Positions 20,775 to 54,340 are shown, counted from the stretch's first letter. The stretch: DNA of 64,000 nt from Macrostomum lignano (GCA_002269645.1 NIVC01002260.1:1-64000), one strand, 5' to 3'. Made by a program: numbers and translations. The notes: generated from the letters alone by a model not told the origin.

Positions 20775-21437
20775 TCCCAATATTTCGTGTCTGTTGCGAG
20801 GAGACCAAGAGAGAAATGCGGGAGCTTTAGGTTCAGTGCGTTGAGTCTGTCGGTCTTGCCCTTGAGTGGCCTGTTATATGAAGCACTACGAACTCTGTGA
20901 GGGACTCAGAGAGAGATAAAGACAGATAAACTGCTTTCTTCTCTCTGCCTTTTTCTATTGTTTATCGTACTGGGCAAACACTGCACGCATCTTTGAGTTC
21001 GTCACAGAATGTACTCAGAGCTTGAGGAGAGACGGGCCCTCAGGTTTCTGGTCTCAGCGAGTAGTTGAGTTTGGATTGCTCTGAGGCTTCTGTCTTTTTT
21101 GCAGCTCAGATCCGCAAGATTCGGAAAGTAACTTCATTCTAAAATGGTGGCTCACCTCCTGGTTGAAATATGCAGATAGCTTGAGGATGGTTGGCACCCC
21201 AAAAGGCGCTTAGTTTAAACAGACTTTCAAAACTGTAGGGTGAAAATTTTCTTCTGCCGCGGGAACTCGTGAAAGTTGATGGTTGAAGATTTTATCAGAC
21301 GCACTGTGTGTTCATGCAAGCTTGATAGAAGCGCCTGTTTGCACTGACAGGACGAGACACGTATTTATGGCACACCAGCCAGAGCCAGCTCCATCTTCGC
21401 ATCGCATGCTATCTAGCATTTTACCGGCGGACAGAGC

Positions 21438-22811
21438 ATGGGCGCCGCACCAGCAGCTGGTGTGGCCATCGCTTCGGTGATGAAGCTCGGGCATAAGATC
21501 GTGGAGCTGCAGTTTGCCATCCAGAGACCGGACACATTCAACTGGACAAATGGCAGCTGCCAGAAGCTCAGCGCCAGCTCGCAGGCAACGGAGCATTCAA
21601 CATTTTTCACCTGGATCTGGGGGGCCAGATACCTGCTGCCCGTGCTAGGCGGCGCCCTGACCGTCTCCGGCATCGGCTATGTCCGGGTGCTGAAGTTGGG
21701 CGGCTGTCTCATGCTGCTGTCCGCCACTTTGATGTCTGTTGCAGTTCAAGTCGGCTGGATGTGCACTCGGCCGCAGCTCTGCTTGTTCCTGTGGCTCCTG
21801 CTGCCGCTCACCTTCGCTCTGGTCCATCCAAACGTCATGCACGCGATTTTCCGCTGGCATCGGCCCGGGTCGCGCAACTGTACGATTGTGTCGACCGTCT
21901 ACTGCGGCTCGGCTGTGCTGGGCGAGTGCATCGGCATGCTGCTGCCGGATGTCGCTGGCTCTGGCGTCACCTTCACCGGCGCTGCCATCTCTGTGCTGTT
22001 CCTGTGGCTGTCCCTCAGCCTGCGCGAGGAGCTGGAGTACTCCGTGCCACCAGTGTCGCGCCTGTTCCGCTACTGCTTCCTGTTTGCCGCGCTTATCGTC
22101 TTTGTGATCTCCGTGTCGGACTGCCGGTCCGCAGTCTACCAAGCCGAGATCCGGTACTGGCTGCTGTCTGTCGGCAGCTCGCCTAGTGCGAGCCGCTGGC
22201 TGAAAATTGCGTCGCCCGAGGTTGTCAAACTAATTAGCCTGGCGGCCACCTGCGCCGGGACGGCCATCCTTGCCTGGCGCCTGCCAGTCAGGCGGCTTCC
22301 GAGGCGGCAGCGAGTTCAGGCCGGAATCCTGCTGGAGAGTGGCGTGTCCATCGGCCTGATTCTGGTCAGCTTTCTGCAGCTGCCCAGCGAGACCGCCGTC
22401 TGTGCGGTCTACACGGCCGCCTCCTGTCTGGACGGAGTCGCCACCGGAGTGACGATGGTGGCCGCCTACGAGCTGATGGACGCCATGTCAGACAGGAGCG
22501 CCAAGCCGCTGGTCATTGGCATCGTGTTCACCGTGCTGGGGCTGGCAAACATCCTCGGTCAGCTGATGCTAGCGCTGTTGCGCTCAGTCCCCGTCGCAAA
22601 TCCCGTGCTGCTGCCGCGGGAGGGCAGCCGACCGCTGTTCTACGTGTACCACGTGATCATCCTGCTGCTGCTGCTGCTGTGCCTGGCCTACCACCGCTGC
22701 TTCGCCTTCCGGCTAGCCTCCACAGCCGTTATCGAAGAAGATGAAGAGGATGGTCGGGAAGCAGCCGAGAGGCCTCTAATCGAAGGCGGCCAGCAGGCGG
22801 CCGGCAGATGA
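21438..22811 (+). CDS. Divergent POT/PTR2 (SLC15-like) MFS transporter, paralog A (457 aa, intronless)
   Basis: Polytopic hydrophobic ORF. YLLPVLGGAL...G matches POT TM2 (YLTPILGALIADSWLG in PepT1). TM4, TM5, TM7 and TM10 also align with POT motifs. AATAAA downstream. Confidence 0.8.
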   Translation: MGAAPAAGVAIASVMKLGHKIVELQFAIQRPDTFNWTNGSCQKLSASSQATEHSTFFTWIWGARYLLPVLGGALTVSGIGYVRVLKLGGCLMLLSATLMSVAVQVGWMCTRPQLCLFLWLLLPLTFALVHPNVMHAIFRWHRPGSRNCTIVSTVYCGSAVLGECIGMLLPDVAGSGVTFTGAAISVLFLWLSLSLREELEYSVPPVSRLFRYCFLFAALIVFVISVSDCRSAVYQAEIRYWLLSVGSSPSASRWLKIASPEVVKLISLAATCAGTAILAWRLPVRRLPRRQRVQAGILLESGVSIGLILVSFLQLPSETAVCAVYTAASCLDGVATGVTMVAAYELMDAMSDRSAKPLVIGIVFTVLGLANILGQLMLALLRSVPVANPVLLPREGSRPLFYVYHVIILLLLLLCLAYHRCFAFRLASTAVIEEDEEDGREAAERPLIEGGQQAAGR

Positions 22812-23710
22812 TATCGGGATTTGCAATAAAAGCACTGAGACAATAAATCCGAACTTTTTAATGAATTTTTTAACTCGTCTGACCTGTGCGATCAAACATT
22901 TATCTTACTCTAATAAAGTATTTCATAGTGTTTTAAATGCATTCTCTCTCGTACTTTTCGATTCTCTTTTTCACTGGTTGGGTGAGAACTTGACTTACTT
23001 GACTTAGCTGCAGGTGGCGTCCGGCGGATGCAACGAGGAGGCGGAGGAGACCCCCCATTTCGCTAGCCCCTGGCGACCAATGACTTCCATTGAGCGAGAA
23101 CATTCTCTAAGTGTTTCGATAATGTAGGTGATTTTAGCATAAAAAAGCAGCGTGGGCTTGCGAATACAAACCCCATAGGTGGCCTGAGCATGGCCCCGTA
23201 CAGCCTACTGTTGTAGGCAGCCATAGGCCTGACCGACAGCTTTGATCTGTCGCGGTAGTCACGACACAGCGATTGACACTCCTGCGGATGTCTGCACAGT
23301 GCGCTGAGGTCTTGGCCGTTCCTCAGCCCATCTGATGCCACCTCCGTGCGTTTGAACCGTTCATGATGTCGAGCCCTCTTGACTGAGCTGTTGCTGCTGC
23401 TGTTTCCACCAGTTCTCAAAGCGCAGCAGGATAGGAAATGCTCATCTCACAGCATCTTACAGCAAATATTTTTATAAAAATCTATTAAATTCCAGTAATT
23501 CACGTTTACTGCACTTTTAAAATTGCAATATATTCACAGAAGTCAGTAATATTTCATTTTTTCCAGTTTGGTGTCGAAAACTAGGGCGGAAAAGTATCTG
23601 AATAACAAAAGAACGGTGCATCAATTGACAGAAGGCTTTGAGCATTACATGTAATACTGGCATCTTTTGAGAAACACGAAGAATTAGCCTGCTCGATGCC
23701 GAAAGCGAAG

Positions 23711-25135
23711 TCAGATCACGCCTTCTAACAAGTGTCTCTCCTCCGGATTCAGCCCAGGCTCTCTTGAATCATCATCATCTAACTGCTCGGATTCCGTGTC
23801 ACAGGGCTCGGCGTCCGCGATCTGGACAGAAATCGGCAGCGTGACCAGCTTGTGGTAGAAAAAGCAGGCAGTCAGCGACAGCACCGCAATCAGGTGGTAG
23901 ATGAAGAACGGCGGTCTCGATCCAGCGTGGTATTCATTGATTCCATTTACCATGCAAACCAGACCATGACTCACATAGTTGGCGAGTCCCCAGACTGTGA
24001 ACATGACGCCGAGGATCAGGCACTGCGAGCTGTCTGGCAGAAGCGAGCACCCGAGGTCGTAGGCCGCGACCATGACCAGCAGCTCGGCAGCTCCGTCCAG
24101 AACGGACATCAGGGAGTACACGGCCACAGTTGCAGCTGGAGAGCTCAGTCCAACTAGGGTCACAATGATGAGGCAAACATCAACTAAGCACTTCAGTAGG
24201 ATTCCAGTCAGAATTCGAGACTTTACGTCCAGCTTCCGTCGGCTCTTGACCGCGGCAATTATCATCGGCAGAGCCAGGACGTCAATACTGACGCATTTTA
24301 TCCCGTTAGGTGCCAGCCATGTGTGCGCGACAGCATCCGCGGTCTCATTCATAAAGTAATTCATTTCTGATAGATAAACTTGCGATCGAGAGTCGCTCAG
24401 GAAGGTCATGAACAAAATTAGTGCAGAGAAAATTTGGAAGTACTTCAACATCCTGCTTTTCGTGGGCAATTCGAACGGGTACTCTCGAAGCTCCGGCAGA
24501 AACGCAGTCAGCGTTAGGAAGGCGAGGCTCACGGCCACGAACACGAGGGTGAAGCTGTGTCCGAGCACGCTGACGCACCCAAACTGCAGGAACGGCGAAG
24601 ACACCAGCTCCCCGAAAGCTGCAACGGCATAATAGATTGTTGCGGTCACTGTGCACAGCCTGCTCCTTCTGTGCCAGCAGAACATGGCCATGAGAACGGA
24701 CGGTTGAACGAGTCCAAAAAACACGGGTAGGAGCAGCCAGGTAATGATAACCACCGGCGAGTCCTGGCACATCAGGCCGAGAAACACCGACACGGACATC
24801 AGCACTGTCGACAGCAGCATCACTGCGCCACCAAGCTTGAGGACCCGCTTGCATCCGAACCAAGCACTGGACATGAAGCCTCCAACAATTGGCAGAATGT
24901 AGCGGGAAACGTAAATCCATTCCGTGATTCTGTCTGTTAGCCTGTCAGATGGACTGTCGGCCTGGCTACCATTAAAGTAGCAAGTTTCGCCTGCTGACAC
25001 CATGCCATTGTTAGTAAAGTTACTGCTGCGGTGGAAGTGGGCTGGATTGAACGCTCTGAACTCCCGTTCGACGAGCTTGTTTAGTATCTTCATCTGGGCG
25101 GCCATGACAATGCTTAGCCCTGCTGTGGAGGTCAT
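23711..25135 (-). CDS. Divergent POT/PTR2 (SLC15-like) transporter, paralog B (474 aa, intronless)
   Basis: Intact ORF; YILPIVGGFMSSAWFG, FGLVQPSV, YYAVAAFGEL, GAAELLVMVAAYDL; acidic tail ending EERHLL. Confidence 0.85.
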   Translation of the reverse strand: MTSTAGLSIVMAAQMKILNKLVEREFRAFNPAHFHRSSNFTNNGMVSAGETCYFNGSQADSPSDRLTDRITEWIYVSRYILPIVGGFMSSAWFGCKRVLKLGGAVMLLSTVLMSVSVFLGLMCQDSPVVIITWLLLPVFFGLVQPSVLMAMFCWHRRSRLCTVTATIYYAVAAFGELVSSPFLQFGCVSVLGHSFTLVFVAVSLAFLTLTAFLPELREYPFELPTKSRMLKYFQIFSALILFMTFLSDSRSQVYLSEMNYFMNETADAVAHTWLAPNGIKCVSIDVLALPMIIAAVKSRRKLDVKSRILTGILLKCLVDVCLIIVTLVGLSSPAATVAVYSLMSVLDGAAELLVMVAAYDLGCSLLPDSSQCLILGVMFTVWGLANYVSHGLVCMVNGINEYHAGSRPPFFIYHLIAVLSLTACFFYHKLVTLPISVQIADAEPCDTESEQLDDDDSREPGLNPEERHLLEGVI

Positions 25136-25855
25136 TGCCGATGATCAGCTTGAACTGAATCTGCAAGCAAGCAAGCGCAAAGAGAGCTTTAATTTACAGA
25201 CCCTACTCTCGGTTGTATTTATGGGCACTACACTGTACACCAGCCATTCCTTCCTGCGCTTCTCAAACTGGATTGAGCACGTCCAAGCAGCCTTCCAGCC
25301 TCTTGTCGAGTTCTATTGTGCCAAGCTGTGCAAAAACTGAGATGAAACTGTATAGAAGCCCTAAAAACTTGCCCCCCCGCAACGCGTTTTTAGCGCAGTA
25401 GCATCCTTATTTTATACGAGTGTACTTCGTATATGTCTTCATCGCCTCATCAGAAAGAGCTTAATGTATAATCAGTTTCCTCGCTCTTTGACAATGCAAG
25501 CGGGGTTGCTAAGAAGAGTTTTTTAGCAACTTCAGTGTCCCAGAGCGGCAAACTCGTCAAGGATTTACTCCTGCTGTTTACTCATTGCATTTAATGTGTG
25601 TGGGATGGTTGCTCAACGAAATTAACCAAATTTCACTGCAATCCTTCAATAAAAAATCCGTCACAGCTAAAAAATTGCCAAAAAAAGAAGTTGAAACTCT
25701 AGAAACAACTTCTCTTAGCAAACTTGAATGGGAAGTCCTATAAGGGACAAAAAAGCTTGTATGAAAGTGCAACATCAGGCATACTCGCAATTTAGCTTTT
25801 AAAATATTGCAGGTAGACGCAAGAATGGCTTCACAAACAAAGTAGCACGCAGGCC

Positions 25856-27285
25856 TTAGGGGCGATCAAGCAAAGGGCGCGTTTCTACATCAGAGTCCGC
25901 GTCATCCACGATCTGGTCGTTTTCGGCCGCGTCAATCTCATCTTCCTCGCTGAGGGCGGTCATGTGACTGGCAGTCGGCAGCGTGACGAACTTGTGATGG
26001 CAGAAGCAGCCGATCAGCATCACCAAGGCGATCAGGTGGTAAACGAAAAACAGCGGCTTTGATCCTTTTCGCGAGTTGTTGACGTCGACTAAAAGCCGAA
26101 AGAGTCCCCGACTGACAAAGTTCGAAACTCCTCTGACAGTGTACATGACGCCGAGGATCAGGCACTGCGAGCTGTCTGGCAACAGCAGACACCCGAGGTC
26201 GTAGGCCGCAACCATGACCAGCAGCTCAGCAGCTCCGTCCAGAACGGACATTGTCAAGTAAATGGCAAGTGCTACTGTGACCGAGGCCGAATCGAATGAG
26301 GTGACAATGATGAGGCACAGTTCGATTGCACACTTCAACAGAATTCCAGGCAGCATGCGAGACGGAGCAGCCAGCCTCCGCCTGCTTATGACAGCTGCAA
26401 GCATCAAAGGCAGGGACAGAACCAGAAAACTCGTGCACTTAATAAACTCCGGGGACAGCCATCTCTGCTCCACGATACTAAGAGTTCCATTCAATAGATA
26501 GTTCAATTCGGATTTGTAAACTGCAGGCCTTTCGTCACCCTCAAAGGCTAAAAATAGTATCAGCGCTGAAAAGATCTGGAAGTACTTGATCATCCGTCTA
26601 GTCGTTGGCAGTTGGGAATGGCTCTTCCTCGCGGATTTCTGGCATGAATGCCGTCAATGTAAGAAACGCGATGCTCACCACTATGAACACCAGAGTAAAA
26701 TTGCGTCCAATAATGTGTTCTGATGCGAAATACCTGTACACAAACGGCATGGATATCATCTCTCCAAGAATAGCAAACGCGTAGTACGTGGTAGTCATCA
26801 CAGTGCACAGTTTATCTTTGCGGTGCCACCAAAAATATAGCGAGCAGAATGTTGGGCTGGTTGAGTCCGTAGAACACTGGCAGGAGCAGCCACGTGATGA
26901 TGATAACGGGCGAATCCTGGCACATCAAATCGAACTTCACAGAAAAAGCGAAAAGTACAGTCGACAGTAGCATTGCATTTCCTCCGAGCTGGAGGACTCT
27001 GACGCAGCCGAGCCAGGCGCTGGATACCAGCCCGCCCAGCACAGGCAGCAGGTATCTCCCGGTGTACAGCCATGACGTGGCCAAATGCATGGCTGTGGGC
27101 GCTCCAGCTAAACTGGCATCGAAGTAACACGTCTCTTTGGAGTTTGAGACTGCTGGACCATTGCTTGTGTGGTTCTTTCTATGAAAGTGGGCCGGATCCA
27201 ACGTGCTGAATTCCAGTTCGACAAGTTTGCACATCAGCTTCATCAGGCAAGCCACGAAAATGCAGTGCCCAGCTCGGATTTGCAT
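25856..27285 (-). CDS. Divergent POT/PTR2 transporter, paralog C, broken by two +1 frameshifts (assembly error or recent pseudogene)
   Basis: Three ORF pieces (26812-27285, 26598-26801, 25856-26593) join into a full-length paralog. This requires removing one base from the A5 run at 26831-26835 (gives IFWWHRKDKLCTV) and one from the G3 run at 26614-26616 (gives EPFQLPTTRRMIKY). Confidence 0.8.
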
Positions 27286-28619
27286 GATTTCCTTCTGCAG
27301 AAAATGCTCTTACCGTGCTAGATGATGCTTCTAATACATTTTTGCGATGACGCATAAATCTATTTACTCACTTCAAGCCCGTCGCTGTGCCAATGTGTCG
27401 TACATGCACTCGTTCTGCGCCTCGCGGGGACTGAAAACAGCCTTCTCTCTGTGCATTCCAGTTTCACTCACCAGTGCGCTTTAGACGCCAGTACGACCCC
27501 GAAATGCACAGGCCTCGAGGGACCAATTAGCGTCCTCCTGCGTGTTTGCTGTGCAAACCACTGTGCGCAAACGCTCTGCGGAAGCGTGCAGACACCCTCG
27601 GCCAGCCCACTGCGCATCTCGGGAATAAGTTATTAAGAGCCAGCATCAAAATGTGCATTATTCTATTATTCTTAATTACCATCTGAATAAATATTTTGAC
27701 AAGCATTCGAAATTCCATACGATGGTGTGACACACAACTGGAACTCTGGGGTAAACAGCGTTTGGGAGCTGCGAACCACTCAGTGCCAGCACTGCACAGG
27801 CTGTACGCCACGGCGCCCCCGGAACAACCCTCGGACGCGCCACAATTGCAGCGTCTGTGCGCTTGGCTGTATTTGGCACAGTTGCGGCGAGCCGGGGTAT
27901 GCATGCATATGAACCAGAAATATCTATACGAAAATGCATACTTGCAGCTTCCAAGCGAGTGGCAAGTAGGTAAATGATTAGAATCACCCAGCCCAAACTA
28001 GAATATTTACATCTACACTGCCGATTAAATTTCGTTTCAGTTACATTGGCCGATACAAAAATTCTGTGCAGACTGCGCGCTGACTTATGTGATGGAGGAC
28101 TAGCCCTGCCCCCCCCCCCGTCACTCTGAAGTTGCCACGCTCGTGCGCTTGTAACCACCCGGTAAAATATTAGGGATTTACAGCGGCTTTGAATTTAAAG
28201 GACTCAAAGTTCGTTTGGAGAGATTTTTGCCAGACTAAATATGATCCTTGGATGGATCTGTTGCTAGCCGGTTAATCAATAGAAATAGCGCAGTTTTACT
28301 TTTAGTAAGTTGCAGATAGATTGGGCTCAGATGATGAATATTCAAGCACATTAAATAATAAAAATACCATAGAACGAGCTAATTTAGCGAGCGAGGCGAA
28401 TCAAGCACCCGGGTATGCTTTTATGACAGTTAAAGATCAAGGACCACTAGCACACGATCTTTCAGTGTAACGTCCTGATATACTGCTAGTGGTCCTTGTT
28501 AATGATTTGCATTGTTGTGGCTATAATAAATGTGAGATTAGGAAGTTGAGAAGAACAAAACATATTGTTGCGAAATGGGAGCTGCAACTGAGGTTGGATT
28601 TTCTGGAAAAATTGTGGGG

Positions 28620-28812
28620 ACATGCTGCAGACATGCTGGAGATATGCTTTAGACATGCTGGAGACATGCTGCAGACATGCTGCAGACATGCTGCAGACAT
28701 GCTGGGGACATGCTGCAGACATGCTGGAGACATGCTGCAGACATGCTGCAGACATGCTGCAGACATGCTGGGGACATGCTGCAGACATGCTGGAGACATG
28801 CTTTAGACATGC
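28620..28812. repeat. 11-bp tandem repeat (CATGCTGCAGA/CATGCTGGAGA)n
   Basis: Directly visible. Confidence 0.93.
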
Positions 28813-28986
28813 CGGAGATATTAGTCGAAGTTTTTTCAAGACAAAACCAACAGCTTTATTCGAACCAGTACCCATGGAAGAAAGCTTTTGAAATGCATAC
28901 GACTATTTCCTCGTGAAGTGTCCAGAGAACCTGACAGCAGCACCAAATCCGAAACAAGGACAACTTAAGTTGTCCTTGATCCGAAA

Positions 28987-30420
28987 TCAGTCAAGTATAC
29001 TCCGCAGTTCCGGGTTCGAGTTCTCATTATCAGGATCGTCTTCTAACTGTTCATCGGCGGCCGCATCGAGCTCAGCCTCTTCGCTGAGTTCGGCCATCCG
29101 ATCAGCCATCGGCAAGGTGACGAACTTCTGGTACAGAAAGCCAGCGGACAGCAGCAACAGGGCAATGAGGTGGTAAACGAAGAACAACGGCTTAGATCCA
29201 TTTTGGAAATTATTGAGCTGCTTTGAAACACGAAGCAAGCCCGCACTGACAAAAATTGCGAGGCCCCATACAGTGAAAATGATGCCGAGAAGCAGGGCCT
29301 GCGCGTTGCCTGGCAACAGCAAGCACCCGAGATCGTAGGTCGCAACTGTCACCAGCAGCTGGGCCACTCCGTTGAGAATAAACGTAATGATGTACACGCT
29401 AGCAGTTGTAGTCACGTGTGTCAGTCGACTGAGGTTACAATGAGTAGAGACAGCTCAACTGCACACTTCAGCAGGATTCCAGAAAGCATCCGAGGCGCCA
29501 CGGGAAGTCTCCTACCGCTCATTGCTGCTATCAATATCAGGAGCGGTGCTGTGACAACGAGAGTGACGTCTCTGACCCAGGAAGGCGAGAGCCAAGGACA
29601 TTCAGTAGTGTCGACCGTTTCCCGCATGAAGAAGCTCATTTCAGACAGGCTGATGGCCGAACGGGCGTCATTTAACACAGCAAAAATCGGAATAAGCGCT
29701 GAAAAGATTTGGAAGTATTTTCATCAACCGCTGCTTGCTTGGCAATTCGAACAGACCCTCCTCGGGTACTTGTGGAATGAAGGAAGCCAACAATTGGTAG
29801 GCGAGGCTTATTGCAACGAATGCCAGCGTGAAGTTTCTGAGAACGCTCGTCCTTGGGAAATGCTCGCAGACAAACGCCGCGGACACCAAATCGCCGATTG
29901 CGGCGATAGCGCAATAGGCTGCCGTCACTGCGGTGCACAGCCTGCCTCTTCTGTGCCAGCAAAACAATGCCATCAGAATATTCGGCTGGTTGAGTCCGTA
30001 GAACACTGGGAGGAGCAGCCATGTGATGATGGTGATGGGCGAGTCCTGGCACATCAGGCCGAGGTGCACAGACACGGCCAGGAGGACCGTCGAGAGCAGC
30101 ATTACGGCGCCACCGATCTGAAGAACTCTGACGCAGCCGAGCCAGGCGCTGGACACCAGCCCGCCGAGAACGGGAATCAGGTATCTGGCAGAGTACAGCC
30201 ATGATGTCGTCAGCTGAATGCCTGTTGGTCGATCAGCCTTCCTGAGCTCATAACTGCACAGCCCATCATAGTTTGCTTGTGCCGGGGCATTTTCACTGAT
30301 GTTTTTCCAATAGAAATGCTCAGGGCTCAACAAACTGAACTCAATTTCAACAAGCTTGAACAGAAGCTTCATCAGACTGGCAAGAAGTAAGCACCTCCAA
30401 GGTTGCGCGCTCATAGTCAT
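28987..30420 (-). CDS. Divergent POT/PTR2 transporter, paralog D, broken by one +1 and one -1 frameshift
   Basis: ORF pieces 29668-30420, 29421-29678 and 28987-29415 join into a full-length paralog. There is an extra base in the T4 run at 29718-29721 (removal restores MKYFQIFSAL) and a missing base near 29428. Confidence 0.8.
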
Positions 30421-30972
30421 ATTTTTACACCGTTTGAAGACAGCTTAAACCATGTCGATGAACAAGACAGAGGCAATCAAAGCGGCAGTTGGCGAGCAAG
30501 AGGCGGCGTCAGCAAAATTGATTGCAGAGATGACGAGAGTGGCGAGAGAGCAAAGGCCACGCGGCGGCATAAATATGCACCCCCACAGTTTACAACTCAT
30601 TACTCCGCCCCGCGCGTACATAGGCAAGCCAGTGAACGGAGCAGAGTAATGCGCTCGTTGGCACACATTGAACGCCACCGTTTTGCACGTCCCTGGCGCG
30701 CTCTCTAAACTCTAAAAGCGATCAAAGCCAGTTATGAAATTTTTAAGCCCTTCTGCATGACTGAATGCACTGTTTGTTTACATATTTGTAGGTTCACAGA
30801 TTCGACAATGAATTCAGAAGCTTCATAATCGTAATTCATAATCATAACCGACCGTTTGCCCTGCTCTTGCCTGGCATTGGCTGGTCGCACTCTGACAGAC
30901 TTCACTGCCTCGCCTGCAGCTCTTCAGTTTGTGCTTTCTACATCAAACAGTTTAATTCTAAATCTACATCAA

Positions 30973-31101
30973 AGAGAATATTGAGCATACATAGAATGCC
31001 AACGTAGCTTTTAAAAGTGAAGGCGAACTCCCGGCGGAACGCGAAAATCGGCTTCACTTTTTAAAGCTACGTTGGCATTCTATGTGTGCTCAATATTATC
31101 T
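30973..31101. repeat. Near-perfect inverted repeat/hairpin (~50-bp arms, ~22-nt loop); mini-MITE or hairpin RNA precursor
   Basis: Left arm AATATTGAGCATACATAGAATGCCAACGTAGCTTTTAAAAGTGAAGGCGA pairs with the right arm with only a few mismatches. Confidence 0.85.
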
Positions 31102-32182
31102 GTTATAAACTTCGAATTGCGATAGGATTTACATTTACTGTTTAGTGTTGAATGGGGTTTAGCCATAAACAACTTCATACACTCTGGCCGCTTACCGGTC
31201 TCCGGTAGCATTTCATGAAAATTGTTCGATGAACTTGTGAGTTGCACCTCGGACAAAACAAATGAAATGTTTGTAAATTGTAAAAACATTGCAAGCTTTG
31301 CATCTCGCCAATGCATTTTGTAACGAGAAATATTTACACGACTTGCGAGTGCAGCACCCTTCTGGTTGAGTTGTCCATGGAGAAATCCGTGCTCGAATAG
31401 ACTATCATGGAAACTCTCTCAAATCGATGCAAGTTTGAGAGAGTTTAACAGTGCTCTGCGGAAGAATGAGCAAAGAAGAAGTCACAAACCGACGAAGAAA
31501 GCAAAGGTAAGACTGAAGGTGAGACCAAAACTCCCAACCCAAGTTCCCAGTTTTTATGATCCCAGTTTCTAGGGAAACCATGCCGATTCACAAAAAACCC
31601 TTGTTGTTACCAATAGTAGTACCTGCTCAGCAGCTCTGCTCAGCAAAATTCAGTATATTGAAGGAAATGCGGGCATAAGCCGCTATCGTGAACCGAATTT
31701 CCTAATCGCGAGGTAAAGAGAGTCTTCCTTTGGTCTCGGAGTTAATCACTTTGCATAGTTAGCGAAGGCTTCTGTCATAGACATAAAATGAACCAATAGT
31801 CCATACACATCAAAATTAACTACTTCGAAGTAGCAGTTTATGAACGTGCCACGGAGAGTTTTAGCCTAATTTTACTTGCAGATGTTTGCTATGGTCGAAA
31901 AGTCTTGCTACCACAGACAAAAAGCTCAATTACTTGGCGAACAAACCTTGGGTTAAATTCAATGCGTGCAGGCCCAAATATGGGCTGCAAAAAGCTACAT
32001 TGGCTCTCTTTTCTTATTGCTGTACATATGCTAGGCACATTTATACAGAAATATGAAATTAATATATAGTCAAAGGGATCAAATTTCGTTTTACTATGCA
32101 TTAACAAAATACGCTCGTAGCTGGTACTTGCAAACAAGCGCATTAAAGTCAGTTTCAGATTGCCTCATCATTCACTTCCATC

Positions 32183-32650
32183 CAGGGGCGTCGCTAACGG
32201 GGGGACAGGGGGGACATGTCCCCCCTGTAAAAGATCTGGGGGGACATGCCAATGCATTGTCCCCCCCAACCCCACCTTGTGACCCGTTATGGAAATCAAT
32301 AATGTTGCTGCACGGTGACAAAACATAGTGCCTGCGGCGCTAAAATGAGTGCCTGCGGCGCTAAAATGAGTGCCTGCGGCGCTAAAATGAGTGACCGAGG
32401 CGCCAAAATGAGTGTCTGCGGCGCTAAAATGAGTGACCGAGGCGCCAAAATGAGTGCCTGCGGCGCTAAAATGAGTGACCGAGGCGCCAAAATTAGTGCC
32501 TGCGGCGCTAAAATGAGTGCCTGCGGTGCTAAAATGAGTGCCTGCGGCGCTAAAATGAGTGACCGAGGCGCCAAAATTAGTGCCTGCGGTGCCAGAATGA
32601 GTGCCTGCGGCGCTAAAATAAGTGCCCGTGGCGCAAAAATGAGTGCTGAC
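32183..32650. mobile_element. Possible hAT-like element end (CAGGGGCGTCGCTAAC) followed by a 21-bp minisatellite (GAGTGCCTGCGGCGCTAAAAT)n
   Basis: The repeat at 32330-32645 is directly visible. The terminus resembles the TIR of the 60709 element, but no partner TIR or TSD was found. Confidence 0.4.
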
Positions 32651-32979
32651 AACACCGATTCTGAAAATAATCTAAAAGTTCAGTTAGATGTGATTTTCTA
32701 TAAACAGTTATTTAGATTATAGTGTAACAATGTTTCCAACACGAAAGTATCTAATAGTCCTCACCTATTCAAAATAGCAACTGCAAATACATCAATGATG
32801 GCTATGGAGTATGAAGTGCCAAATATGCAAGCTATGCGCGTGTATTCAAAGCGGATCACACAAATATGTGGCGTTGCTATTCCTCTTTGCTAATCAGCCT
32901 CTGTCCGCTAAATCTGCACGCTAAATCCATTCAACGAGCTCTTCATAGACATTTCGAAAGAGACTGAGAGGTTTCAAAA

Positions 32980-34035
32980 CGGAGTTGAGGCACAGAGCAG
33001 AGTCCGGATCCGAGCGGAGTTGAGGCACAGAGCAGAGCCCGGATCCGAGCGGAGTTGAGGCACAGAGCAGAGCCCGGATCCGAGCGGAGTTGAGGCACAG
33101 AGCAGAGCCCGGATCCGAGCGGAGTTGAGGCACAGAGCAGAGTCCGGATCCGAGCGGAGTTGAGGCACAGAGCAGAGTCCGGATCCGAGCGGAGTTGAGG
33201 CACAGAGCAGAGCCCGGATCCGAGCGGAGTTGAGGCACAGAGCAGAGCCCGGATCCGAGCGGAGTTGAGGCACAGAGCAGAGCCCGGATCCGAGCGGAGT
33301 TGAGGCACAGAGCAGAGTCCGGATCCGAGCGGAGTTGAGGCACAGAGCAGAGTCCGGATCCGAGCGGAGTTGAGGCACAGAGCAGAGCCCGGATCCGAGC
33401 GGAGTTGAGGCACAGAGCAGAGCCCGGATCCGAGCGGAGTTGAGGCACAGAGCAGAGTCCGGATCCGAGCGGAGTTGAGGCACAGAGCAGAGCCCGGATC
33501 CGAGCGGAGTTGAGGCACAGAGCAGAGTCCGGATCCGAGCGGAGTTGAGGCACAGAGCAGAGCCCGGATCCGAGCGGAGTTGAGGCACAGAGCAGAGCCC
33601 GAATCCGAGCGGAGTTGAGGCACAGAGCAGAGTCCGGATCCGAGCGGAGTTGAGGCACAGAGCAGAGTCCGGATCCGAGCGGAGTTGAGGCACAGAGCAG
33701 AGTCCGGATCCGAGCGGAGTTGAGGCACAGAGCAGAGCCCGGATCCGAGCGGAGTTGAGGCACAGAGCAGAGTCCGGATCCGAGCGGAGTTGAGGCACAG
33801 AGCAGAGTCCGGATCCGAGCGGAGTTGAGGCACAGAGCAGAGTCCGGATCCGAGCGGAGTTGAGGCACAGAGCAGAGTCCGGATCCGAGCGGAGTTGAGG
33901 CACAGAGCAGAGTCCGGATCCGAGCGGAGTTGAGGCACAGAGCAGAGCCCGGATCCGAGCGGAGTTGAGGCACAGAGCAGAGCCCGGATCCGAGCGGAGT
34001 TGAGGCACAGAGCAGAGCCCGGATCCGAGCGGAGT
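32980..34035. repeat. 35-bp satellite (GAGTTGAGGCACAGAGCAGAG[T/C]CCGGATCCGAGCG), ~30 copies
   Basis: GGATCC recurs with period 35 (33006, 33041 and onward); nearly homogeneous, with one main C/T variant. Confidence 0.97.
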
Positions 34036-34842
34036 CGAGGTGCGGAGTGGGGTCGGAATTTTGGGCCAGTTTACGTATCTGCGGGTAAATAAAGGCCTTG
34101 ACTTGGTTTTATTGTGGAGTATCATTCATAAAGTCACTGTTACTTGGTACAGGGCCGCTTGACAATCGAAAGCGTATCTACTATCATATTAGGGTGTTAA
34201 TAGCTAAGAAACGTCAGCAAAAGACGCTTGAGCACAAGGTCGCAGCTAAATTGACACACTGGTACAATCTCTGTGCCAGTACAAATGAGGGCACACCAAT
34301 ACGAACTGGGACCAGCAGTTAAAGAATTTACCAGGCGATCAGTTGTTGCTCTACCCGTGCACTTTGCTGGGCAAATAGCGCATAATGAGACAGCAGCTGA
34401 TTAGATACGGGCTATTGGGCTCATCGAGAGCTTTGACTCGCCTGATAACACGAAAGGTTTCGCCTGCGTGCCAAGGAGCTGGGCTGGAGTTGAATTAAAT
34501 TATCATATTTCATTGCTTTGCCTGAAAACAAAGACAACTCGAAGAGCGGCTGCTCAAGCCAACACAAGTTTATTGCACAGAATTGGAAATGCGTTTAGGA
34601 AGAGGCAGGTCTGTAATCAAAAGTGAGAGCTCGAGCTATCGAGCCTGAGCTGCGCCAAATATGGGAGTGGAGCAACGATAAGAAGAAAGAAATCGACCAA
34701 AAGGAGCAAGCAGACGCGATAAGAGAAAGTTAGCGCTATTCGTTACTTAAACAAGCGTACTTTGATTCCCCGTGTCTGCCGCTTCACTAAGTATTCGTTT
34801 ATAGAATTTTTTTGATTCGCAGTACCACCCGCAGGTGTATCA

Positions 34843-36435
34843 ATGAGCCGCGAGTTCCTCCTGGAAGAGAAGATCATCGCCGTCAAGAAGTCGCACTTCG
34901 AAGGCGTTGGAGTGGTCGGTGGCTTGGACAGAGGTACCAAATATTATTATGCAACACTATTTTAAACTAAACATACCAATACTGGTACTTGTGCCTGTAA
35001 GCGTATTTAAAATCTCGGTGCCACCAGGCTGCACGCTGACAAAGGTCCTGTTCAGCACCGTGAAGGATGATGAGCATTACAACCTGCACTTCGCTCTGTT
35101 CAAGAACTCTCACTTCGAGGCCGGCTTGGACTACCTGAAGGAGAAGGGCATGGTTGTTCAGGTACCCGGAGCAAAGCTGCACGTCACTGGAGCTGGTTGC
35201 GACATGCACCGCGAGCTGATCAAGCAGAAGCTGGGACTCGAGTACGTCCCACTGAAGCAATGAGCACACAGAAGTTGGATTGGTAATTAACTCATGCTGC
35301 AAAACTGTCTCTCCCCTATTCAGAATCCAATTCATCAACGAGTTCCTCACGCAAGGCCGCGGCACCCACTGGCTAATAGGGTGCGCTGATGACTCCGAGA
35401 TCTGCTACCCGGAGCCCGAGCTGGATATGTCCGAGTTTGAGGGCCTCCAAGCAAACAACTTCCTACAAAAACTAATCGAAAAGGCTAAGAAAGACCTCGG
35501 AGAGCCCATAGAGGGCCAGAAGTTTCCCTGCATGATGCTGTTCATGGGATCTGGTGGTGGAATAATGAAGGTCAGTTAAAATGGAAGACTTTTGTAGAAG
35601 AATATGCAATAACAGCAAAGTTCACTTGGATCATTCGGTTTTAAACAACAAAAAATCAGATCGAGGAGAACGGAATGTCTGACATGGTCGGTGGACTTTG
35701 GTTCGCCGGTCGCAGCTTCCTTGGCCTGAGCAAGCTGCTGCTGGGCACCGATGACTACGATGAGATCCTGGAGCTGGCCAGCAAGGGAAGGCGAAACAAT
35801 GTCGATACGGAGGTGAAGGACGTCCTTGCCAACGATCCGAACTCGCCGTACGGTCAGCTTCCGCCGAACCTTCCTGTCTTTCCGTTCGGCAAGGCGGTTG
35901 ATACTGACAAGACACGTAAGGGTGTAAAGCACATGTTTAGGAGTGGAAAAGTACGTATGACTGAGTGAAAGTCAACAAAGTTATTACATTGGACCCTAAC
36001 CCATTAATACAGTGGCTGACCTGAGCCGAGAAGACTTGGCGAACTCCATCGTGTTCAGCTTTGCGTACAACGCATTCACAAACTTGGCTTTGGCGGCTCA
36101 GACTTCCAAGATCCCCAAGCTCTACATGGGCGGCAACTTTTTTCGCCACGAGCTCATTCGAGCCGAGATTCTTAAAATCGTGCGCCTTTTCACTGGCGTA
36201 AGCTTCGTTCATTATTCGTAAATATTTTTTGATAACCAGACTTGCCTTTTATCGATTCAAAACTGTTTACTGCTGATGCAATTCGCAGGAGTCAATCGCG
36301 CTGAAGTTTCTGATTACTGGCCACACTGGAGCCATTGGCGCCATGATCAGCAAGCCGGAGGACGAGTTCAAGTACCTGGCCTTCATGCAGCAGCAGGCTC
36401 AGCAGGCGCCCGACGGAGCCAACTCTCCAGCTTGA
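34843..36435 (+). CDS. Divergent type II (eukaryotic, Fumble-like) pantothenate-kinase-like protein (6 exons, 379 aa)
   Basis: Exons 34843-34933, 35028-35241, 35324-35570, 35660-35915, 36013-36197 and 36289-36435; all GT-AG and in frame (1140 nt). Motifs are collinear with PanK-II: DRGCTLTK (DIGGTLVK), VTGAG (ATGGG), NEF (DEL), FMGSG (NIGSG), GRSFLGLSKLLLG (GGTFLGLCSLLTG), PFGK (SFGN), SREDLA, GNFFR and GAIGAM (GAVGAL). Confidence 0.88.
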
Positions 36436-36964
36436 CCAATGGTGGCTGATTGGGACTGAGCATGTTTGAAATTTTCGAATTGTTACAATACAGAGAATTC
36501 TTAAGATTTAGATTATATTCATGTATTTGCACTTGCTGATTTATTTCTGGTATGCTACTCCTACCGAGCTTGGTTGATGAGCGTACAGCCTATACTTTAT
36601 TAAAAACAAAGACTACGCTCGTACCAGTATTTCTGAGAAAATTTAATCAGTCTAAAGTCTCTTCCAGAAAAACCCAGAAAATGCCTGCACTTGTACAGGT
36701 GTAGAGCAGCTATGTACAATATTCATAGCCACCGCTGCACAATACGAATACACTAGCTGCTATTTAAGTACAGTGCGCACATTGATACAATAATGTACGC
36801 TTCCTATTGCTCTTTTTTCAACCCTTTAACGAAATAGACCCGGCTTTCTCACCTAAACAATCGAGTGCTCGCAGTCTCGATGCAATAAAATAAACTGCTC
36901 GCTGCACGGTCAGGCATCAGAACTTTGCGCAGCGGAATCTGTCCTCACAATAACGAATTGAATA

Positions 36965-38338
36965 ATGCAAATCCACGCTCTGAGAGGCGTTCTCTTGGCT
37001 TGCTTGATGAAGCTTTGCACCAAGATAACTGAGACGTTATTTACGATAGAAGATCCATCAAACTTTCGGCTGTCGAACGAAGCCGGCTCTTTAAATGAAT
37101 CGTGCCATTTCTCCACTGAGCTATCAGCAAACAACTCTCAAGCATCAATCACCACGTGGATCTACACCTTAAGATACTCACTGCCAGTACTTGGTGGGCT
37201 GATCTCCAGCGTTTGGTTTGGAACTGTCGCCGTACTTCAGATCGGTGGGATTATTATGCTGCTGTCGACTGTCCTGCTATCCGTATCGGTGTACCTCGGA
37301 TTCATGTGCCAAGCATCGCCAATAATTACAGTCACATGGCTACTGCTTCCAGTGTTCTACGGGCTCACTCAACCGAGCATAGTGCACTGCATGTTCAGCT
37401 GGTTCAAGCGGCCGAAGCTTTTCACAATTGTATCAGCAATATATTATGCAGTTTCCGTAACTGGAAAATACATCGCGCTGTTGTTGTTGCCACTGAACAA
37501 AGCTGAGTGGTTGGGACCTAATTCGTCTGTCATCTACATTGCAATAAGCGTACTGTTCGTTGCCTTGCCGTCTTTCTTCCCGGTAGTGTCCCGCGAAGAA
37601 CCATTCGAAATGCCAACCCTATTTAGAATGAGCAGGTACTTCCAGATCTTCTCTGCCCTCATAATATTCCTTTTTGCCGTCGACGACACCAGATCTGCTG
37701 TCTACGCAACGGAACTTGAGTATTATCTCAATGCGACAGCGAATTTCGAGACCTACTTCTGGCTTTCCCCGAAAACACAAAACCTCACTGCCATGCTGGT
37801 CAGCTGCGTGGCTCTGATAATTGCTGCCTCCATCAGCCGACGGCAGCTTCCCGTTGGGCTTCGGATGCAGGCCGGGATCCTCCTCGGAGCTGCGGTTGCA
37901 GCGAGTCTCACCGTCTTCACCGCGGTCGCTAAAAAGCCCGGCTACTCGGCTGTGGTCACTGTTTACACGGCAGCCTCTATCCTAGATGCAGCTGCTGAGG
38001 TTCTGGTCATGACCGGTGCCTACGACCTGCTTCAGCAGATTACGCCTGGTGGCACCGAGTCTTTCGTCATCGGGATCATGTTCACTGTGTGGGGTCTGGC
38101 CAACCTCGCTAGCCAGGTGGCCCTTCTAACGATGTCTCGATGGCTGCAGCCGCTGGACGACGATCATCCCAAACTGTTTGTGTACCACCTCGTGTCGGTC
38201 ATGCTGCTTCTGGTCTGCTCTGCTTACCACAAAATCATTGCTCTGCCTCTGGCAGCTCAGGTGACCCCTACAGAAATATTGAATGAGGAAGAGACAGTAA
38301 GTGAGCTGCAACCTCTGCTGAGTTCAGATGACGTATGA
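36965..38338 (+). CDS. Divergent POT/PTR2 (SLC15-like) transporter, paralog E (457 aa, intronless)
   Basis: Intact ORF, same motifs as paralogs A-D; tail ELQPLL; AATAAA at ~38361. Confidence 0.85.
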   Translation: MQIHALRGVLLACLMKLCTKITETLFTIEDPSNFRLSNEAGSLNESCHFSTELSANNSQASITTWIYTLRYSLPVLGGLISSVWFGTVAVLQIGGIIMLLSTVLLSVSVYLGFMCQASPIITVTWLLLPVFYGLTQPSIVHCMFSWFKRPKLFTIVSAIYYAVSVTGKYIALLLLPLNKAEWLGPNSSVIYIAISVLFVALPSFFPVVSREEPFEMPTLFRMSRYFQIFSALIIFLFAVDDTRSAVYATELEYYLNATANFETYFWLSPKTQNLTAMLVSCVALIIAASISRRQLPVGLRMQAGILLGAAVAASLTVFTAVAKKPGYSAVVTVYTAASILDAAAEVLVMTGAYDLLQQITPGGTESFVIGIMFTVWGLANLASQVALLTMSRWLQPLDDDHPKLFVYHLVSVMLLLVCSAYHKIIALPLAAQVTPTEILNEEETVSELQPLLSSDDV

Positions 38339-53579: not shown

Positions 53580-54140
53580 CCCCCACCAAAGCAGGTGACC
53601 CCCACCAAAGCAGGTGACCCCCACCAAAGCAGGTGACCTCACCAAAGCAGGTGACCCCCACCAAAGCAGATGACCCCCACCAAAGCAGGTGACCCCCACC
53701 AAAACAGGTGACCCCCACCAAAGCAGGTGACCCCCACCAAAGCAGGTGACCTCACCAAAGCAGGTGACCCCCACCAAAGCAGATGACCCCCACCAAAGCA
53801 GGTGACCTCACCAAAGCAGGTGACCCCACCAAAGCAGGTGACCCCTACCAAAGCAGGTGACCCCCATTAAAGCAGGTGACCCCACCAAAACAGGTGACCC
53901 CCACCAAAGCAGGTGACCCCCACCAAGGCAGGTGACCTCACCAAAGCAGGTGACCCCACCAAAGCAGGTGACCCCCACCAAAGCAGGTGACCCTCACCAA
54001 AGCAGGTGACCCCCATTAAAGCAGGTGACCCCATCTGAGCAGGTGACCCCATCTGAGCAGGTGACCCCATCCGAGCAGGTGACCCCATGTGAGCAGGTGA
54101 CCCCATCCAAGCAGGTGACCCCATCCGAGCAGGTGACCCC
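53580..54140. repeat. 18-19-bp minisatellite (CCACCAAAGCAGGTGACCC)n grading into (CCCCATCYGAGCAGGTGA)n
   Basis: Directly visible. Confidence 0.93.
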
Positions 54141-54340
54141 AACCCAAAAATTATCCACTCTGTTAATCCGGATGTTTTTGGTTAGAAAAGAGAAAGTGAA
54201 AAGAAAAGTTTATTTGGCTTCCTGAGTTTTCTATCCGGCCCAGAACTCTGGCTGCACAATAGTGCAGTTTTATTTATATTTCAATCCAAACGCACTGTGA
54301 GCATTGCACAGCCTGGCAAGATATGCCCGGAGCAGTTTCA

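What the first reader, a model, noticed from the sequence alone, without database searches (positions are those of the whole stretch)
21438..38338. Five-gene cluster of minimal, highly divergent POT/SLC15-like proteins that have lost the proton-coupling and peptide-binding motifs
Seen: five intronless paralogs of ~460-475 aa. By-eye alignment to PepT1-type proteins holds across TM2, 4, 5, 7, 8, 10 and 11. However, the TM1 ExxERFxYY motif is replaced (LMKLxxKLVExEF). The TM4 GGIKP Lys becomes GLxQP (HP in A). The TM5 FYxxIN Asn is lost. The TM10 Glu is kept in B, C and E but not in A or D. Established: ExxER, the TM4 Lys and the TM10 Glu drive H+/peptide symport in POTs; SLC15A4 acts as a lysosomal signalling scaffold and plant NPFs diversified to non-peptide substrates. 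Inference: a lineage-specific expansion with new substrates, uncoupled transport, or a receptor/scaffold role.
Basis: partly seen in the sequence, partly recalled or inferred. Interest (0 to 1): 0.7.

Follow-up and report, generated by a model that had tools for sequence, protein, structure and literature searches.

The report
Divergent flatworm peptide-transporter-like gene cluster
The window holds a tandem cluster of five copies (three intact, two frame-broken) of a very divergent membrane transporter family, found otherwise only in the flatworm Macrostomum, that descends from the proton/peptide transporters (POT/SLC15) but has replaced almost every residue those transporters use to bind protons and peptides.

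Summary
The observation largely holds. Five paralogs (33-55% aa identity) lie at the stated coordinates. A, B and E are intact single ORFs (457/474/457 aa). C and D each need two 1-bp frame corrections, so "five intronless genes" is overstated.

No copy reaches the Pfam PTR2 threshold. A family profile nevertheless hits only POT proteins among solved structures (SLC15A3 7e-7, PepTSo2 3e-6, SLC15A4 1e-5, DtpD 9e-5, NRT1.1 1e-3); the next MFS scores E>1. hhalign against E. coli DtpA/B/D gives 96% over 402 columns, against LacY, GlpT and MdfA under 1%. AF2 (pLDDT 87) gives a 12-helix MFS fold, with the best TM-scores to SLC15A4/A3.

In 1.84 billion proteins the only relatives are about eight Macrostomum lignano proteins. 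One of them, P0007, still carries xxxER..YY, GGxxAD and the TM4 Lys, and bridges to canonical POTs.

New conserved intramembrane charges, dN/dS of 0.2-0.4 and a conserved acidic di-leucine tail point to functional, probably endolysosomal, transporters with altered substrate or coupling. That function is inferred, not shown.

This is a new variant of a known kind, of moderate interest.

The parts
21438..22811 (+). Copy A: intact 457-aa ORF, the most divergent copy (about 35% identity to the others). TM4 His130, TM10 Thr336 but Asp332 kept. Tail ends 'AERPLIE', with the Glu at -3 rather than -4. Shares a 6-residue TM11-12 loop insertion with M. lignano P0001 and P0002.
23711..25135 (-). Copy B: intact 474-aa ORF. 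K16/K20/E23, Q144, D248/R250, D347/E351. C-tail EERHLL.
25856..27285 (-). Copy C: homologous over its full length but split over three frames (27285-26836, 26834-26628, 26611-25859). The breaks are 1-bp insertions in homopolymers at 26831-26835 and 26614-26616. No internal stop codons otherwise. C-tail ETRPLL.
28987..30420 (-). Copy D: homologous over its full length but split into three pieces (30420-29719, 29720-29427, 29424-28990). It has a +1 in an A4 run at 29718-29721 and a -1 near 29424-29427. Both TM10 acidic residues are lost (N351, Q355). Tail ELRSIL.
36965..38338 (+). Copy E: intact 457-aa ORF and the protein that was modelled. 12 TM helices plus a beta-hairpin in the TM1-TM2 loop.
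37010..37033 (+). Copy E, TM1 'KLCTKITE' (K16..K20..E23). This is the position of the POT E1xxE2RFxY motif, here charge-inverted.
37361..37375 (+). Copy E, TM4 'GLTQP'. It aligns to POT 'GLFKP', so the conserved Lys is Gln136.
37457..37459 (+). Copy E, TM5 Val165 at the position of the Asn in the POT 'YYxxxNxG' motif.
37685..37693 (+). Copy E, TM7 'DTR'. The Asp/Arg pair is conserved across the family and aligns under SLC15A4 'QMQ'. This alignment is tentative.
37985..37999 (+). Copy E, TM10 'DAAAE'. E345 sits at the POT TM10 Glu position. D341, one helical turn earlier, is the better conserved of the two in the family.
38303..38320 (+). Copy E, C-terminal 'ELQPLL'. This is an acidic di-leucine [DE]xxxL[LI] motif preceded by an acidic stretch, and a candidate endolysosomal sorting signal.

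Best explanation
The five loci are tandem paralogs of a fast-evolving, Macrostomum-restricted branch of the POT/SLC15 (PTR2) family of MFS transporters. They are stripped to the minimal 12-helix core.

Shown: homology to POTs specifically, the MFS fold, the lineage restriction, long-term purifying selection, and the replacement of the canonical residues (ExxER to KxxxK, TM4 Lys to Gln/His, TM5 Asn lost, TM10 Glu variable).

Inferred:
- The intact copies A, B and E encode working carriers, not relics. The lost POT residues are replaced by a new, conserved set of intramembrane charges: TM1 K16/K20/E23, TM7 Asp-x-Arg, TM10 Asp at i-4, and a TM10 Tyr-Asp/Glu.
- Their cytosolic tails carry a conserved acidic di-leucine signal and their luminal loops carry N-glycosylation sequons, so they most likely sit in endolysosomal or vesicular membranes, like SLC15A3/4.
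- With both peptide-terminus clamps and the ExxER/Lys proton relay gone, they most likely no longer perform canonical H+/di-tripeptide symport. They probably move a different small polar or charged solute by facilitated diffusion or a re-wired coupling.
- C and D are either recently inactivated copies, as in birth-and-death evolution of a tandem array, or victims of homopolymer assembly errors.
For: POT homology:
- The family profile A2 against all PDB sequences hits only POTs: SLC15A3 7e-7, PepTSo2 2.9e-6, SLC15A4 1.3e-5, DtpD 9e-5, NRT1.1 1.3e-3 and DtpA 8e-3. The next MFS protein, EfpA, scores E 1.2.
- hhalign of A2 against an E. coli DtpA/B/D alignment gives probability 96%, E 4.9e-9 over 402 columns.
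- Single-sequence controls: DtpA 82.6%, DtpD 55.9% and DtpB 23%, against LacY 0.2%, GlpT 0.6% and MdfA 0.2%.
- The profile built from window copies only pulls Pfam-PTR2 proteins P0008-P0010 at 8e-6 to 6e-5 from 1.84e9 proteins.
- The bridging member P0007 keeps NLLERSVYY, GGVLAD and GFCKPS, and alone hits only POTs (alignment).

Fold: AF2 gives pLDDT 87.2 and pTM 0.88 with 12 helices. The highest Foldseek TM-scores are to SLC15A4 (0.74, 0.72, 0.71) and SLC15A3 (0.71).

Lineage restriction: every family hit is from M. lignano. The neighbouring GPCR also has a single hit, in M. lignano, at 50% identity.

Selection: dN/dS is 0.22-0.41 with dS saturated. There are no stop codons in C or D outside the four indels.

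New conserved charges and the graded loss of POT residues across the family.

Sorting and topology:
- [DE]xxxL[LI] occurs at the aligned C-terminal position in B, C, E and P0001-P0003, and in the N-terminal tail of P0004 and P0011.
- The PHT-like POT outgroup has an N-terminal ExxPLL consensus.
- An N-terminal dileucine in SLC15A4 is linked to AP-3 trafficking (PMC9169117).
- N-glycosylation sequons lie in the TM1-2 and TM7-8 loops.

Role of the lost residues and precedents for atypical POTs: PMC4675897, PMC9309889 and PMC6048437.
Against: - No single copy passes Pfam PTR2. Only weak MFS_1 hits were found: 24 bits for E, below the 33.4-bit gathering score.
- Foldseek E-values do not separate POTs from other MFS folds; Sialin and VGLUT2 rank first by E-value.
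- There is no expression, localisation or transport evidence of any kind.
- The di-leucine is imperfect in A (ERPLI) and D (ELRSIL), and it sits at the opposite terminus from the SLC15A4 signal.
- I could not inspect model coordinates, so it is not shown that the conserved charges line the central cavity.
- Atypical POTs such as DtpC (QxxEY) remain proton-coupled peptide transporters, so loss of the motif does not by itself prove loss of that function.
- dS is saturated, so the dN/dS values are rough.
Confidence: 0.6

Rival explanations
1. They belong to a different MFS family in which these residues are normal. The POT resemblance would then be generic MFS similarity (motif A, a Gly-rich TM11).
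For: Pfam gives only a sub-threshold MFS_1 hit and no PTR2 hit for the window proteins. Foldseek ranks Sialin, VGLUT2, OxlT and GLUT3 among the top hits by E-value.
Against: All 15 PDB sequence hits with E<0.01 are POTs, although the PDB holds many other MFS families. hhalign controls with LacY, GlpT and MdfA give 0.2-0.6%, against 23-83% for single Dtp proteins and 96% for their alignment. P0007 carries the ER..YY, GGxxAD and KP motifs.
Confidence: 0.05
2. They no longer transport anything and act as membrane receptors or scaffolds. The model would be SLC15A4 recruiting TASL, or a 'transceptor'.
For: The canonical coupling and substrate-binding residues are gone. The tails carry conserved short linear motifs. 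The literature describes SLC15A4 as having scaffold functions (abstracts).
Against: Conserved charged residues inside TM1, TM7 and TM10 and conservation concentrated in the TM helices are what is expected of a carrier cavity. The only conserved tail element is a sorting-type motif, and no docking domain was found.
Confidence: 0.15
3. They are still proton-coupled di-/tripeptide or histidine transporters and use alternative residues, as the atypical POTs DtpC and DtpD do.
For: DtpC and DtpD lack E1 and R (QxxEY) and still transport peptides (PMC9309889). B, C and E keep the TM10 Glu. All copies but D keep an acidic residue one turn earlier, and all keep the 'GLE'-equivalent acid. A TM7 acid aligns with the POT TM7 acidic/polar motif.
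Against: Here E1, E2, R, both Tyr, the TM2 Asp, the TM4 Lys and the TM5 Asn are all replaced at once. That is far more than in any characterised atypical POT that I found.
Confidence: 0.15
4. The whole cluster is a decaying pseudogene array of no function.
For: Two of the five copies are frame-broken. The proteins are absent from the public protein collection. The region is dense in repeats and retroelements.
Against: There are three intact ORFs of 457-474 codons. dN/dS is 0.2-0.4. Motifs are conserved with M. lignano proteins at about 30% identity. C and D have no stop codons apart from the four indels.
Confidence: 0.05

Closest known systems
SLC15A3/SLC15A4 (PHT2/PHT1), the endolysosomal peptide/histidine transporters of the POT family
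   Same: They are among the best sequence hits in the PDB (SLC15A3 7e-7, SLC15A4 1.3e-5) and give the highest structural TM-scores (0.71-0.74). The TM2, TM7 and TM10-11 blocks align. Both have a 12-TM core without the bacterial HA/HB helices and an acidic di-leucine motif in a cytosolic tail.
   Different: The window proteins are about 120 residues shorter. ExxER, the TM4 Lys and the TM5 Asn are replaced. The di-leucine is C-terminal in the window copies rather than N-terminal. No Pfam PTR2 hit is obtained. Assignment to the PHT subfamily rather than to POTs in general is not resolved, because PepTSo2 scores almost as well.
Atypical POTs and NPFs that lack ExxER: E. coli DtpC/DtpD (QxxEY) and plant NPF7.2/NPF7.3
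   Same: They are POT-family members whose TM1 proton-coupling motif is altered, with changed substrate preference or coupling (PMC9309889, PMC6048437). The DtpD sequence read here shows QIWEYFSFYG.
   Different: Those proteins keep E2, the Tyr pair, the TM4 Lys and the TM10 Glu, and they still match Pfam PTR2. The flatworm family has lost essentially the whole set and has positive charges (K...K) where E1 and R sit.
Macrostomum lignano uncharacterised 'MFS domain-containing' proteins (PAA64170.1, PAA65691.1, PAA70215.1, PAA78052.1, PAA85781.1, A0A1I8G6K8)
   Same: They are true family members: 82-355 bits for P0001-P0006 and 38-56 bits for P0007 and P0011 against the window profile. They share the architecture, the TM1 MKLxxK motif and the C-terminal ExxxL[LI].
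   Different: Identity to the window copies is only 21-35%. The set includes less derived members (P0007, P0011, P0004) that keep parts of the POT motifs. None has been characterised or named as POT.
MFSD1-GLMP, the lysosomal dipeptide uniporter (MFS, non-POT)
   Same: It is a functional analogy for the proposed mode: a lysosomal MFS carrier that exports digestion products without canonical POT proton coupling (PMC11252000 and PMC10990142 abstracts).
   Different: No sequence relationship was detected; it is not among the PDB profile hits. This is analogy only.

Membership tests
POT / PTR2 / SLC15 (Pfam PF00854) | Match to the Pfam PTR2 model above the gathering score | tested here: not met
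   No PTR2 hit for A, B, E or the C and D pieces at E<=1. Only the M. lignano member P0007 gives a sub-threshold hit: 15 bits against a cut-off of 27.
POT / PTR2 / SLC15 (Pfam PF00854) | Specific, statistically significant sequence homology to bona fide POTs, over and above other MFS families | tested here: met
   The PDB profile search returns POTs only, down to E 8e-3. hhalign gives 96% and E 4.9e-9 against DtpA/B/D over 402 columns. The LacY, GlpT and MdfA controls score below 1%. The bridging member P0007 hits only POTs.
POT / PTR2 / SLC15 (Pfam PF00854) | TM1 E1xxE2RFxYY proton-coupling motif | tested here: not met
   All five copies read K-x-x-(H/N/T/C/F)-K-(I/L)-x-E-x. The motif is partly kept in P0007 (NLLERSVYY) and P0011 (CALERCTFY).
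POT / PTR2 / SLC15 (Pfam PF00854) | TM2-3 signature GGxxADxxxG(R/K) | tested here: inconclusive
   LPvLGG...G..RvL is kept and is the best-scoring aligned block. However, Ala-Asp is Ser-Ser or Thr-Val in the window copies. The Asp is kept only in P0004, P0011 and P0007.
POT / PTR2 / SLC15 (Pfam PF00854) | TM4 conserved Lys (GxxxKP) | tested here: not met
   It aligns as gLvQP under PepTSo2 GLFKP. The residue is Gln in B-E and His in A, and the Pro is kept.
POT / PTR2 / SLC15 (Pfam PF00854) | TM5 FYxxINxG motif with the peptide-binding Asn | tested here: not met
   The YY....G framework is kept, but the Asn position holds V/A/V/I/A.
POT / PTR2 / SLC15 (Pfam PF00854) | TM10 Glu that binds the peptide N-terminus | tested here: inconclusive
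   It is present in B (E351), C (E349) and E (E345), and absent in A (T336) and D (Q355). An Asp at i-4 is conserved in A, B, C and E.
POT / PTR2 / SLC15 (Pfam PF00854) | Proton-coupled di-/tripeptide (or nitrate/histidine) transport | not testable with these tools
   This requires uptake or electrophysiology assays.
Major facilitator superfamily (MFS) | 12-TM fold made of two six-helix bundles | tested here: met
   The AF2 model has pLDDT 87.2, pTM 0.88 and 12 helices. Foldseek finds 288 PDB matches with E<=1e-3; the 50 listed are all MFS-type carriers, with TM-scores of 0.53-0.74.
SLC15A3/4 (PHT) subfamily, endolysosomal | Cytosolic acidic di-leucine sorting signal and lysosomal residence | tested here: inconclusive
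   [DE]xxxL[LI] is conserved at the C-terminus of B, C and E, with variants in A and D, and occurs at the N-terminus of P0004 and P0011. In SLC15A4 and the PHT-like proteins the signal is N-terminal. Localisation was not tested.

The most novel reading that the evidence does not exclude
A flatworm-specific family of endolysosomal carriers in which the POT proton-relay was charge-inverted rather than lost. E1xxE2R plus the TM4 Lys became KxxxK..E plus a TM4 Gln, with a new TM7 Asp/Arg pair. This would create a mechanistically new coupling mode or substrate class, for example an anionic or zwitterionic digestion product. The expansion would have occurred in tandem in animals that digest food intracellularly in gut phagocytes. 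The graded M. lignano series (P0007, P0011, P0004, P0003, then P0001 and the window copies) would then record the stepwise re-wiring of an MFS coupling site.
Probability: 0.2. Interest if true: 0.65.

Novelty: new variant of a known kind. Interest (0 to 1): 0.42.

Why it matters
If the intact copies are working carriers, the family is a natural experiment. It would show how far an MFS/POT scaffold can drift (21-35% identity, invisible to Pfam) and how a proton-coupling site can be rebuilt with opposite charges. The M. lignano relatives supply evolutionary intermediates for that process.

It would also add an orphan group of probable lysosomal solute carriers in a regeneration model organism that has transgenesis. 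It is also a reminder that 'hypothetical' and 'MFS domain-containing' flatworm proteins can be assigned by profile methods.

The finding does not bear on a long-standing open problem, and no function has been demonstrated.

Tried and rejected
- Single-sequence searches led nowhere. Pfam gave only sub-threshold MFS_1. The word-indexed search of 5.8e9 proteins with copy E gave no hit. phmmer of E against the PDB gave only noise, thioredoxin at E about 1.5.
- The exact proteins are not in the public collection and no encoding contig was found, so the source organism could not be named.
- The first AF2 run used only window sequences and was unusable (pLDDT 55). It was replaced by the run with the 17-row alignment.
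- Foldseek E-values do not discriminate among MFS families, so I relied on sequence profiles and used TM-scores only as supporting evidence.
- hhalign against the PHT-like set A3 gave only a local TM10-12 match at 86%. That outgroup is itself atypical, so canonical E. coli Dtp proteins were fetched instead.
- The hhalign alignment of TM7 to DtpA runs into the bacterial HA/HB insert and was disregarded. Its gapped TM1 and TM10 alignments were replaced by the ungapped register, which HMMER and P0007 support.
- dN/dS cannot date the C and D inactivation because dS is saturated.
- Literature searches for Macrostomum plus SLC15, and for the M. lignano locus tags, returned nothing.
- Assignment to the PHT subfamily rather than the PepT or bacterial subfamilies was considered and left open, because the scores are too close.


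Full report
**1. What is in the sequence**

The window is eukaryotic. It contains copia- and gypsy-type retroelement ORFs, a multi-exon ankyrin/kinase gene, an intronless GPCR and dozens of minisatellites.

Between 21438 and 38338, tblastn with the intact copies finds exactly five homologous loci and none elsewhere:
- A: 21438-22811 (+)
- B: 23711-25135 (-)
- C: 25856-27285 (-)
- D: 28987-30420 (-)
- E: 36965-38338 (+)

A, B and E are uninterrupted ORFs of 457, 474 and 457 aa.

C and D are homologous from end to end, but each is distributed over three reading-frame segments.
- Reading the junctions, C carries two 1-bp insertions, one in an A5/T5 run at 26831-26835 and one in a G3/C3 run at 26614-26616.
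- D carries a 1-bp insertion in an A4/T4 run at 29718-29721 and a 1-bp loss near 29424-29427.
- Outside these four indels there is no stop codon in either copy.
- B-C, B-D and C-D show dN/dS of 0.22-0.27.

C and D were therefore under constraint for nearly all of their history. They are either very recent pseudogenes or the product of homopolymer indel errors in the assembly. I cannot tell which. "Five intronless paralogs" is right for the loci and wrong for two of the reading frames.

**2. Which family**

Single-sequence methods fail:
- Pfam gives only a sub-threshold MFS_1 hit, 24 bits for E against a 33.4-bit gathering score, and no PTR2 hit.
- The word-indexed search of 5.8e9 proteins returns nothing.
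- phmmer against the PDB returns noise.

A profile of the window copies (A1) was then searched exhaustively against 1.84e9 representative proteins and found only 11 hits.
- Eight are family members. All those with a source name are uncharacterised Macrostomum lignano proteins.
- Three (P0008-P0010, E 8e-6 to 6e-5) are POT proteins by Pfam. A JGI source names close relatives of P0010 'peptide/histidine transporter 3/4'.

Adding the M. lignano members gave profile A2. Its results are as follows:
- Against every PDB sequence it hits POTs only: SLC15A3 7e-7, PepTSo2 2.9e-6, SLC15A4 1.3e-5, DtpD 9e-5, NRT1.1 1.3e-3, DtpA 8e-3. The first non-POT MFS protein (EfpA) scores E 1.2.
- I fetched canonical E. 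coli POTs and three other MFS carriers as controls. hhalign of A2 against the DtpA/B/D alignment gives 96% probability and E 4.9e-9 over 402 columns.
- Against single sequences it gives DtpA 82.6%, DtpD 55.9% and DtpB 23%, versus LacY 0.2%, GlpT 0.6% and MdfA 0.2%.

**3. Bridging members**

The MAFFT family alignment and the site table show a graded series within M. lignano.
- P0007 still reads NLLERSVYY in TM1, GGVLAD in TM2 and GFCKPS in TM4, and keeps the TM10 Glu.
- P0011 reads CALERCTFY, with AD in TM2 and GLVRPS in TM4.
- P0004 keeps only the TM2 Asp.
- P0003, P0002, P0001 and the window copies have lost nearly all of these, though P0001 keeps the TM10 Glu as B, C and E do.

P0007 as a single sequence hits only POTs in the PDB: NRT1.1 3.8e-5, PepTSo2 6e-4, SLC15A2 1.5e-3 and SLC15A1 8e-3. 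This transitive chain fixes the alignment register in TM1, which the local HMM alignments do not reach.

**4. Fold**

With the 17-row alignment, AlphaFold2 gives a confident model of copy E: pLDDT 87.2, pTM 0.88, 12 helices and a small beta-hairpin in the TM1-TM2 loop. The model built from window sequences only was poor (pLDDT 55).

Foldseek against the PDB returns the generic MFS fold, and its E-values do not separate families. The highest TM-scores are to outward-open SLC15A4 (0.74, 0.72, 0.71) and SLC15A3 (0.71).

**5. The residue claims**

All of them are confirmed on tool alignments.
- TM1: E1 becomes Lys in 5/5 copies; E2 becomes His, Asn, Thr, Cys or Phe; Arg becomes Lys in 5/5; the first Tyr becomes Glu in 5/5.
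- TM2: Ala-Asp becomes Ser-Ser (Thr-Val in A).
- TM4: Lys becomes Gln (His in A), with the Pro kept.
- TM5: Asn becomes Val, Ala or Ile within a preserved YY....G frame.
- TM10: Glu is kept in B, C and E, is Thr in A and Gln in D.

The tools add three points.
- The substitutions are not random decay. TM1 keeps three conserved charges of changed sign (K16, K20, E23).
- TM7 carries a conserved Asp-x-Arg that aligns, tentatively, under SLC15A4 QMQ.
- An Asp one turn before the TM10 Glu is better conserved than the Glu itself, and a Tyr-Asp/Glu aligns with the eukaryotic GLE(F).

According to the literature read here, ExxER is highly conserved and needed for proton coupling (PMC4675897). E1, E2 and R interplay with the peptide carboxyl terminus, and the atypical DtpC has QxxEY (PMC9309889). 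NPF7.2 and NPF7.3 lack ExxER (PMC6048437). So there are precedents for altering the motif, but none that I found for losing the whole set.

**6. Topology and sorting**

The poorly conserved, acidic C-terminal tails end in an aligned [DE]xxxL[LI].
- Exact matches: EERHLL (B), ETRPLL (C) and ELQPLL (E), plus EETPLI, EDRPLL and ELQHLL in P0001-P0003.
- Variants: A has ERPLI and D has ELRSIL.
- P0004 and P0011 carry the motif in the N-terminal tail instead (ESTELL, EATMLI).

The PHT-like POT outgroup has an N-terminal ExxPLL consensus, and the N-terminal dileucine of SLC15A4 has been linked to AP-3-dependent endolysosomal trafficking (PMC9169117). N-glycosylation sequons fall in the TM1-2 loop, and usually also the TM7-8 loop, which are the predicted luminal loops.

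This fits an endolysosomal or vesicular residence. That conclusion is inference from motifs, not a localisation result.

**7. Lineage**

The window proteins are only 21-35% identical to the M. lignano members, and their exact sequences are not in the public collection. The neighbouring GPCR (12598-14079) has a single database hit, an M. lignano protein at 50% identity.

The source is therefore most likely a macrostomid flatworm other than the sequenced M. lignano strain set. This too is inference.

Copy A shares a six-residue TM11-12 loop insertion with P0001 and P0002, so at least two subtypes predate the split of the two species.

**8. Best explanation and rivals**

The best-supported reading is a Macrostomum-restricted, fast-evolving POT offshoot. 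Its intact members are working, probably endolysosomal, carriers with a re-wired charge network. They have most likely lost canonical H+/peptide symport.

I put about 0.9 on the family assignment and about 0.45 on the functional part.

Rivals:
- Another MFS family (0.05).
- A non-transporting scaffold or receptor (0.15).
- Still a proton/peptide symporter using alternative residues (0.15).
- A dead gene array (0.05).

No literature on this family was found.

**9. Verdict**

It is a new, very divergent variant of a known transporter family rather than a new kind of system. Interest is moderate: it offers an attractive natural series for studying how an MFS coupling site is remodelled, but there are no functional data.

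Noticed in passing
window 807-4608 (+): Three tandem ORFs (807-1769, 2371-3105, 3781-4608) share a roughly 70-aa N-terminal domain (WQGDxxVKKF...; 40% identity, E 2e-10 for the first two). It is followed by low-complexity Ala/Ser/Gly/Pro-rich tails. The first two have no Pfam match; the third was not scanned. This looks like a second small tandem family of unknown function.
   Followed up: partly
window 12598-14079 (-): An intronless 493-aa rhodopsin/Srw-type GPCR. Its single hit in the 5.8e9-protein collection is a Macrostomum lignano protein at 50% identity, which independently points to a macrostomid flatworm as the source.
   Followed up: partly
window 17950-20780 (-): A multi-exon gene encoding ankyrin repeats (20139-20780) followed by a protein kinase domain split over at least two exons (19280-19780 and 17950-18675). 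It lies immediately upstream of copy A on the opposite strand.
   Followed up: no
window 39640-41051 (-) and 49471-51988 (-): Retroelement remnants. One is an integrase/zinc-knuckle plus gag-like ORF, of unassigned retroelement type, adjoining a 12-bp (PAGQ-coding) array at 39048-39333, just downstream of copy E. The other is a Ty1/copia-type gag-pre-integrase/integrase ORF of 632 aa.
   Followed up: partly
whole window, e.g. 6999-8200, 32980-34040, 53580-54144, 60737-61358, 62920-63998: The window has an unusually high density of minisatellites: 25 TRF rows scoring 300 or more. Some lie inside the cluster, at 28615-28818 between C and D, and at 32326-32646 and 32980-34040 (35 bp x 30 copies, 98% identical) between D and E. 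These arrays create long spurious ORFs in several frames.
   Followed up: partly
proteins P0010, P0017-P0135 (outgroup; ENA/JGI assemblies): The POT proteins nearest to the family form a large, expanded PHT-like group, with over 2600 hits. Their consensus has an N-terminal ExxPLL and FGMDQLHD, and it does not show a canonical ExxER in TM1. This may be another atypical POT expansion in unidentified invertebrate assemblies.
   Followed up: no
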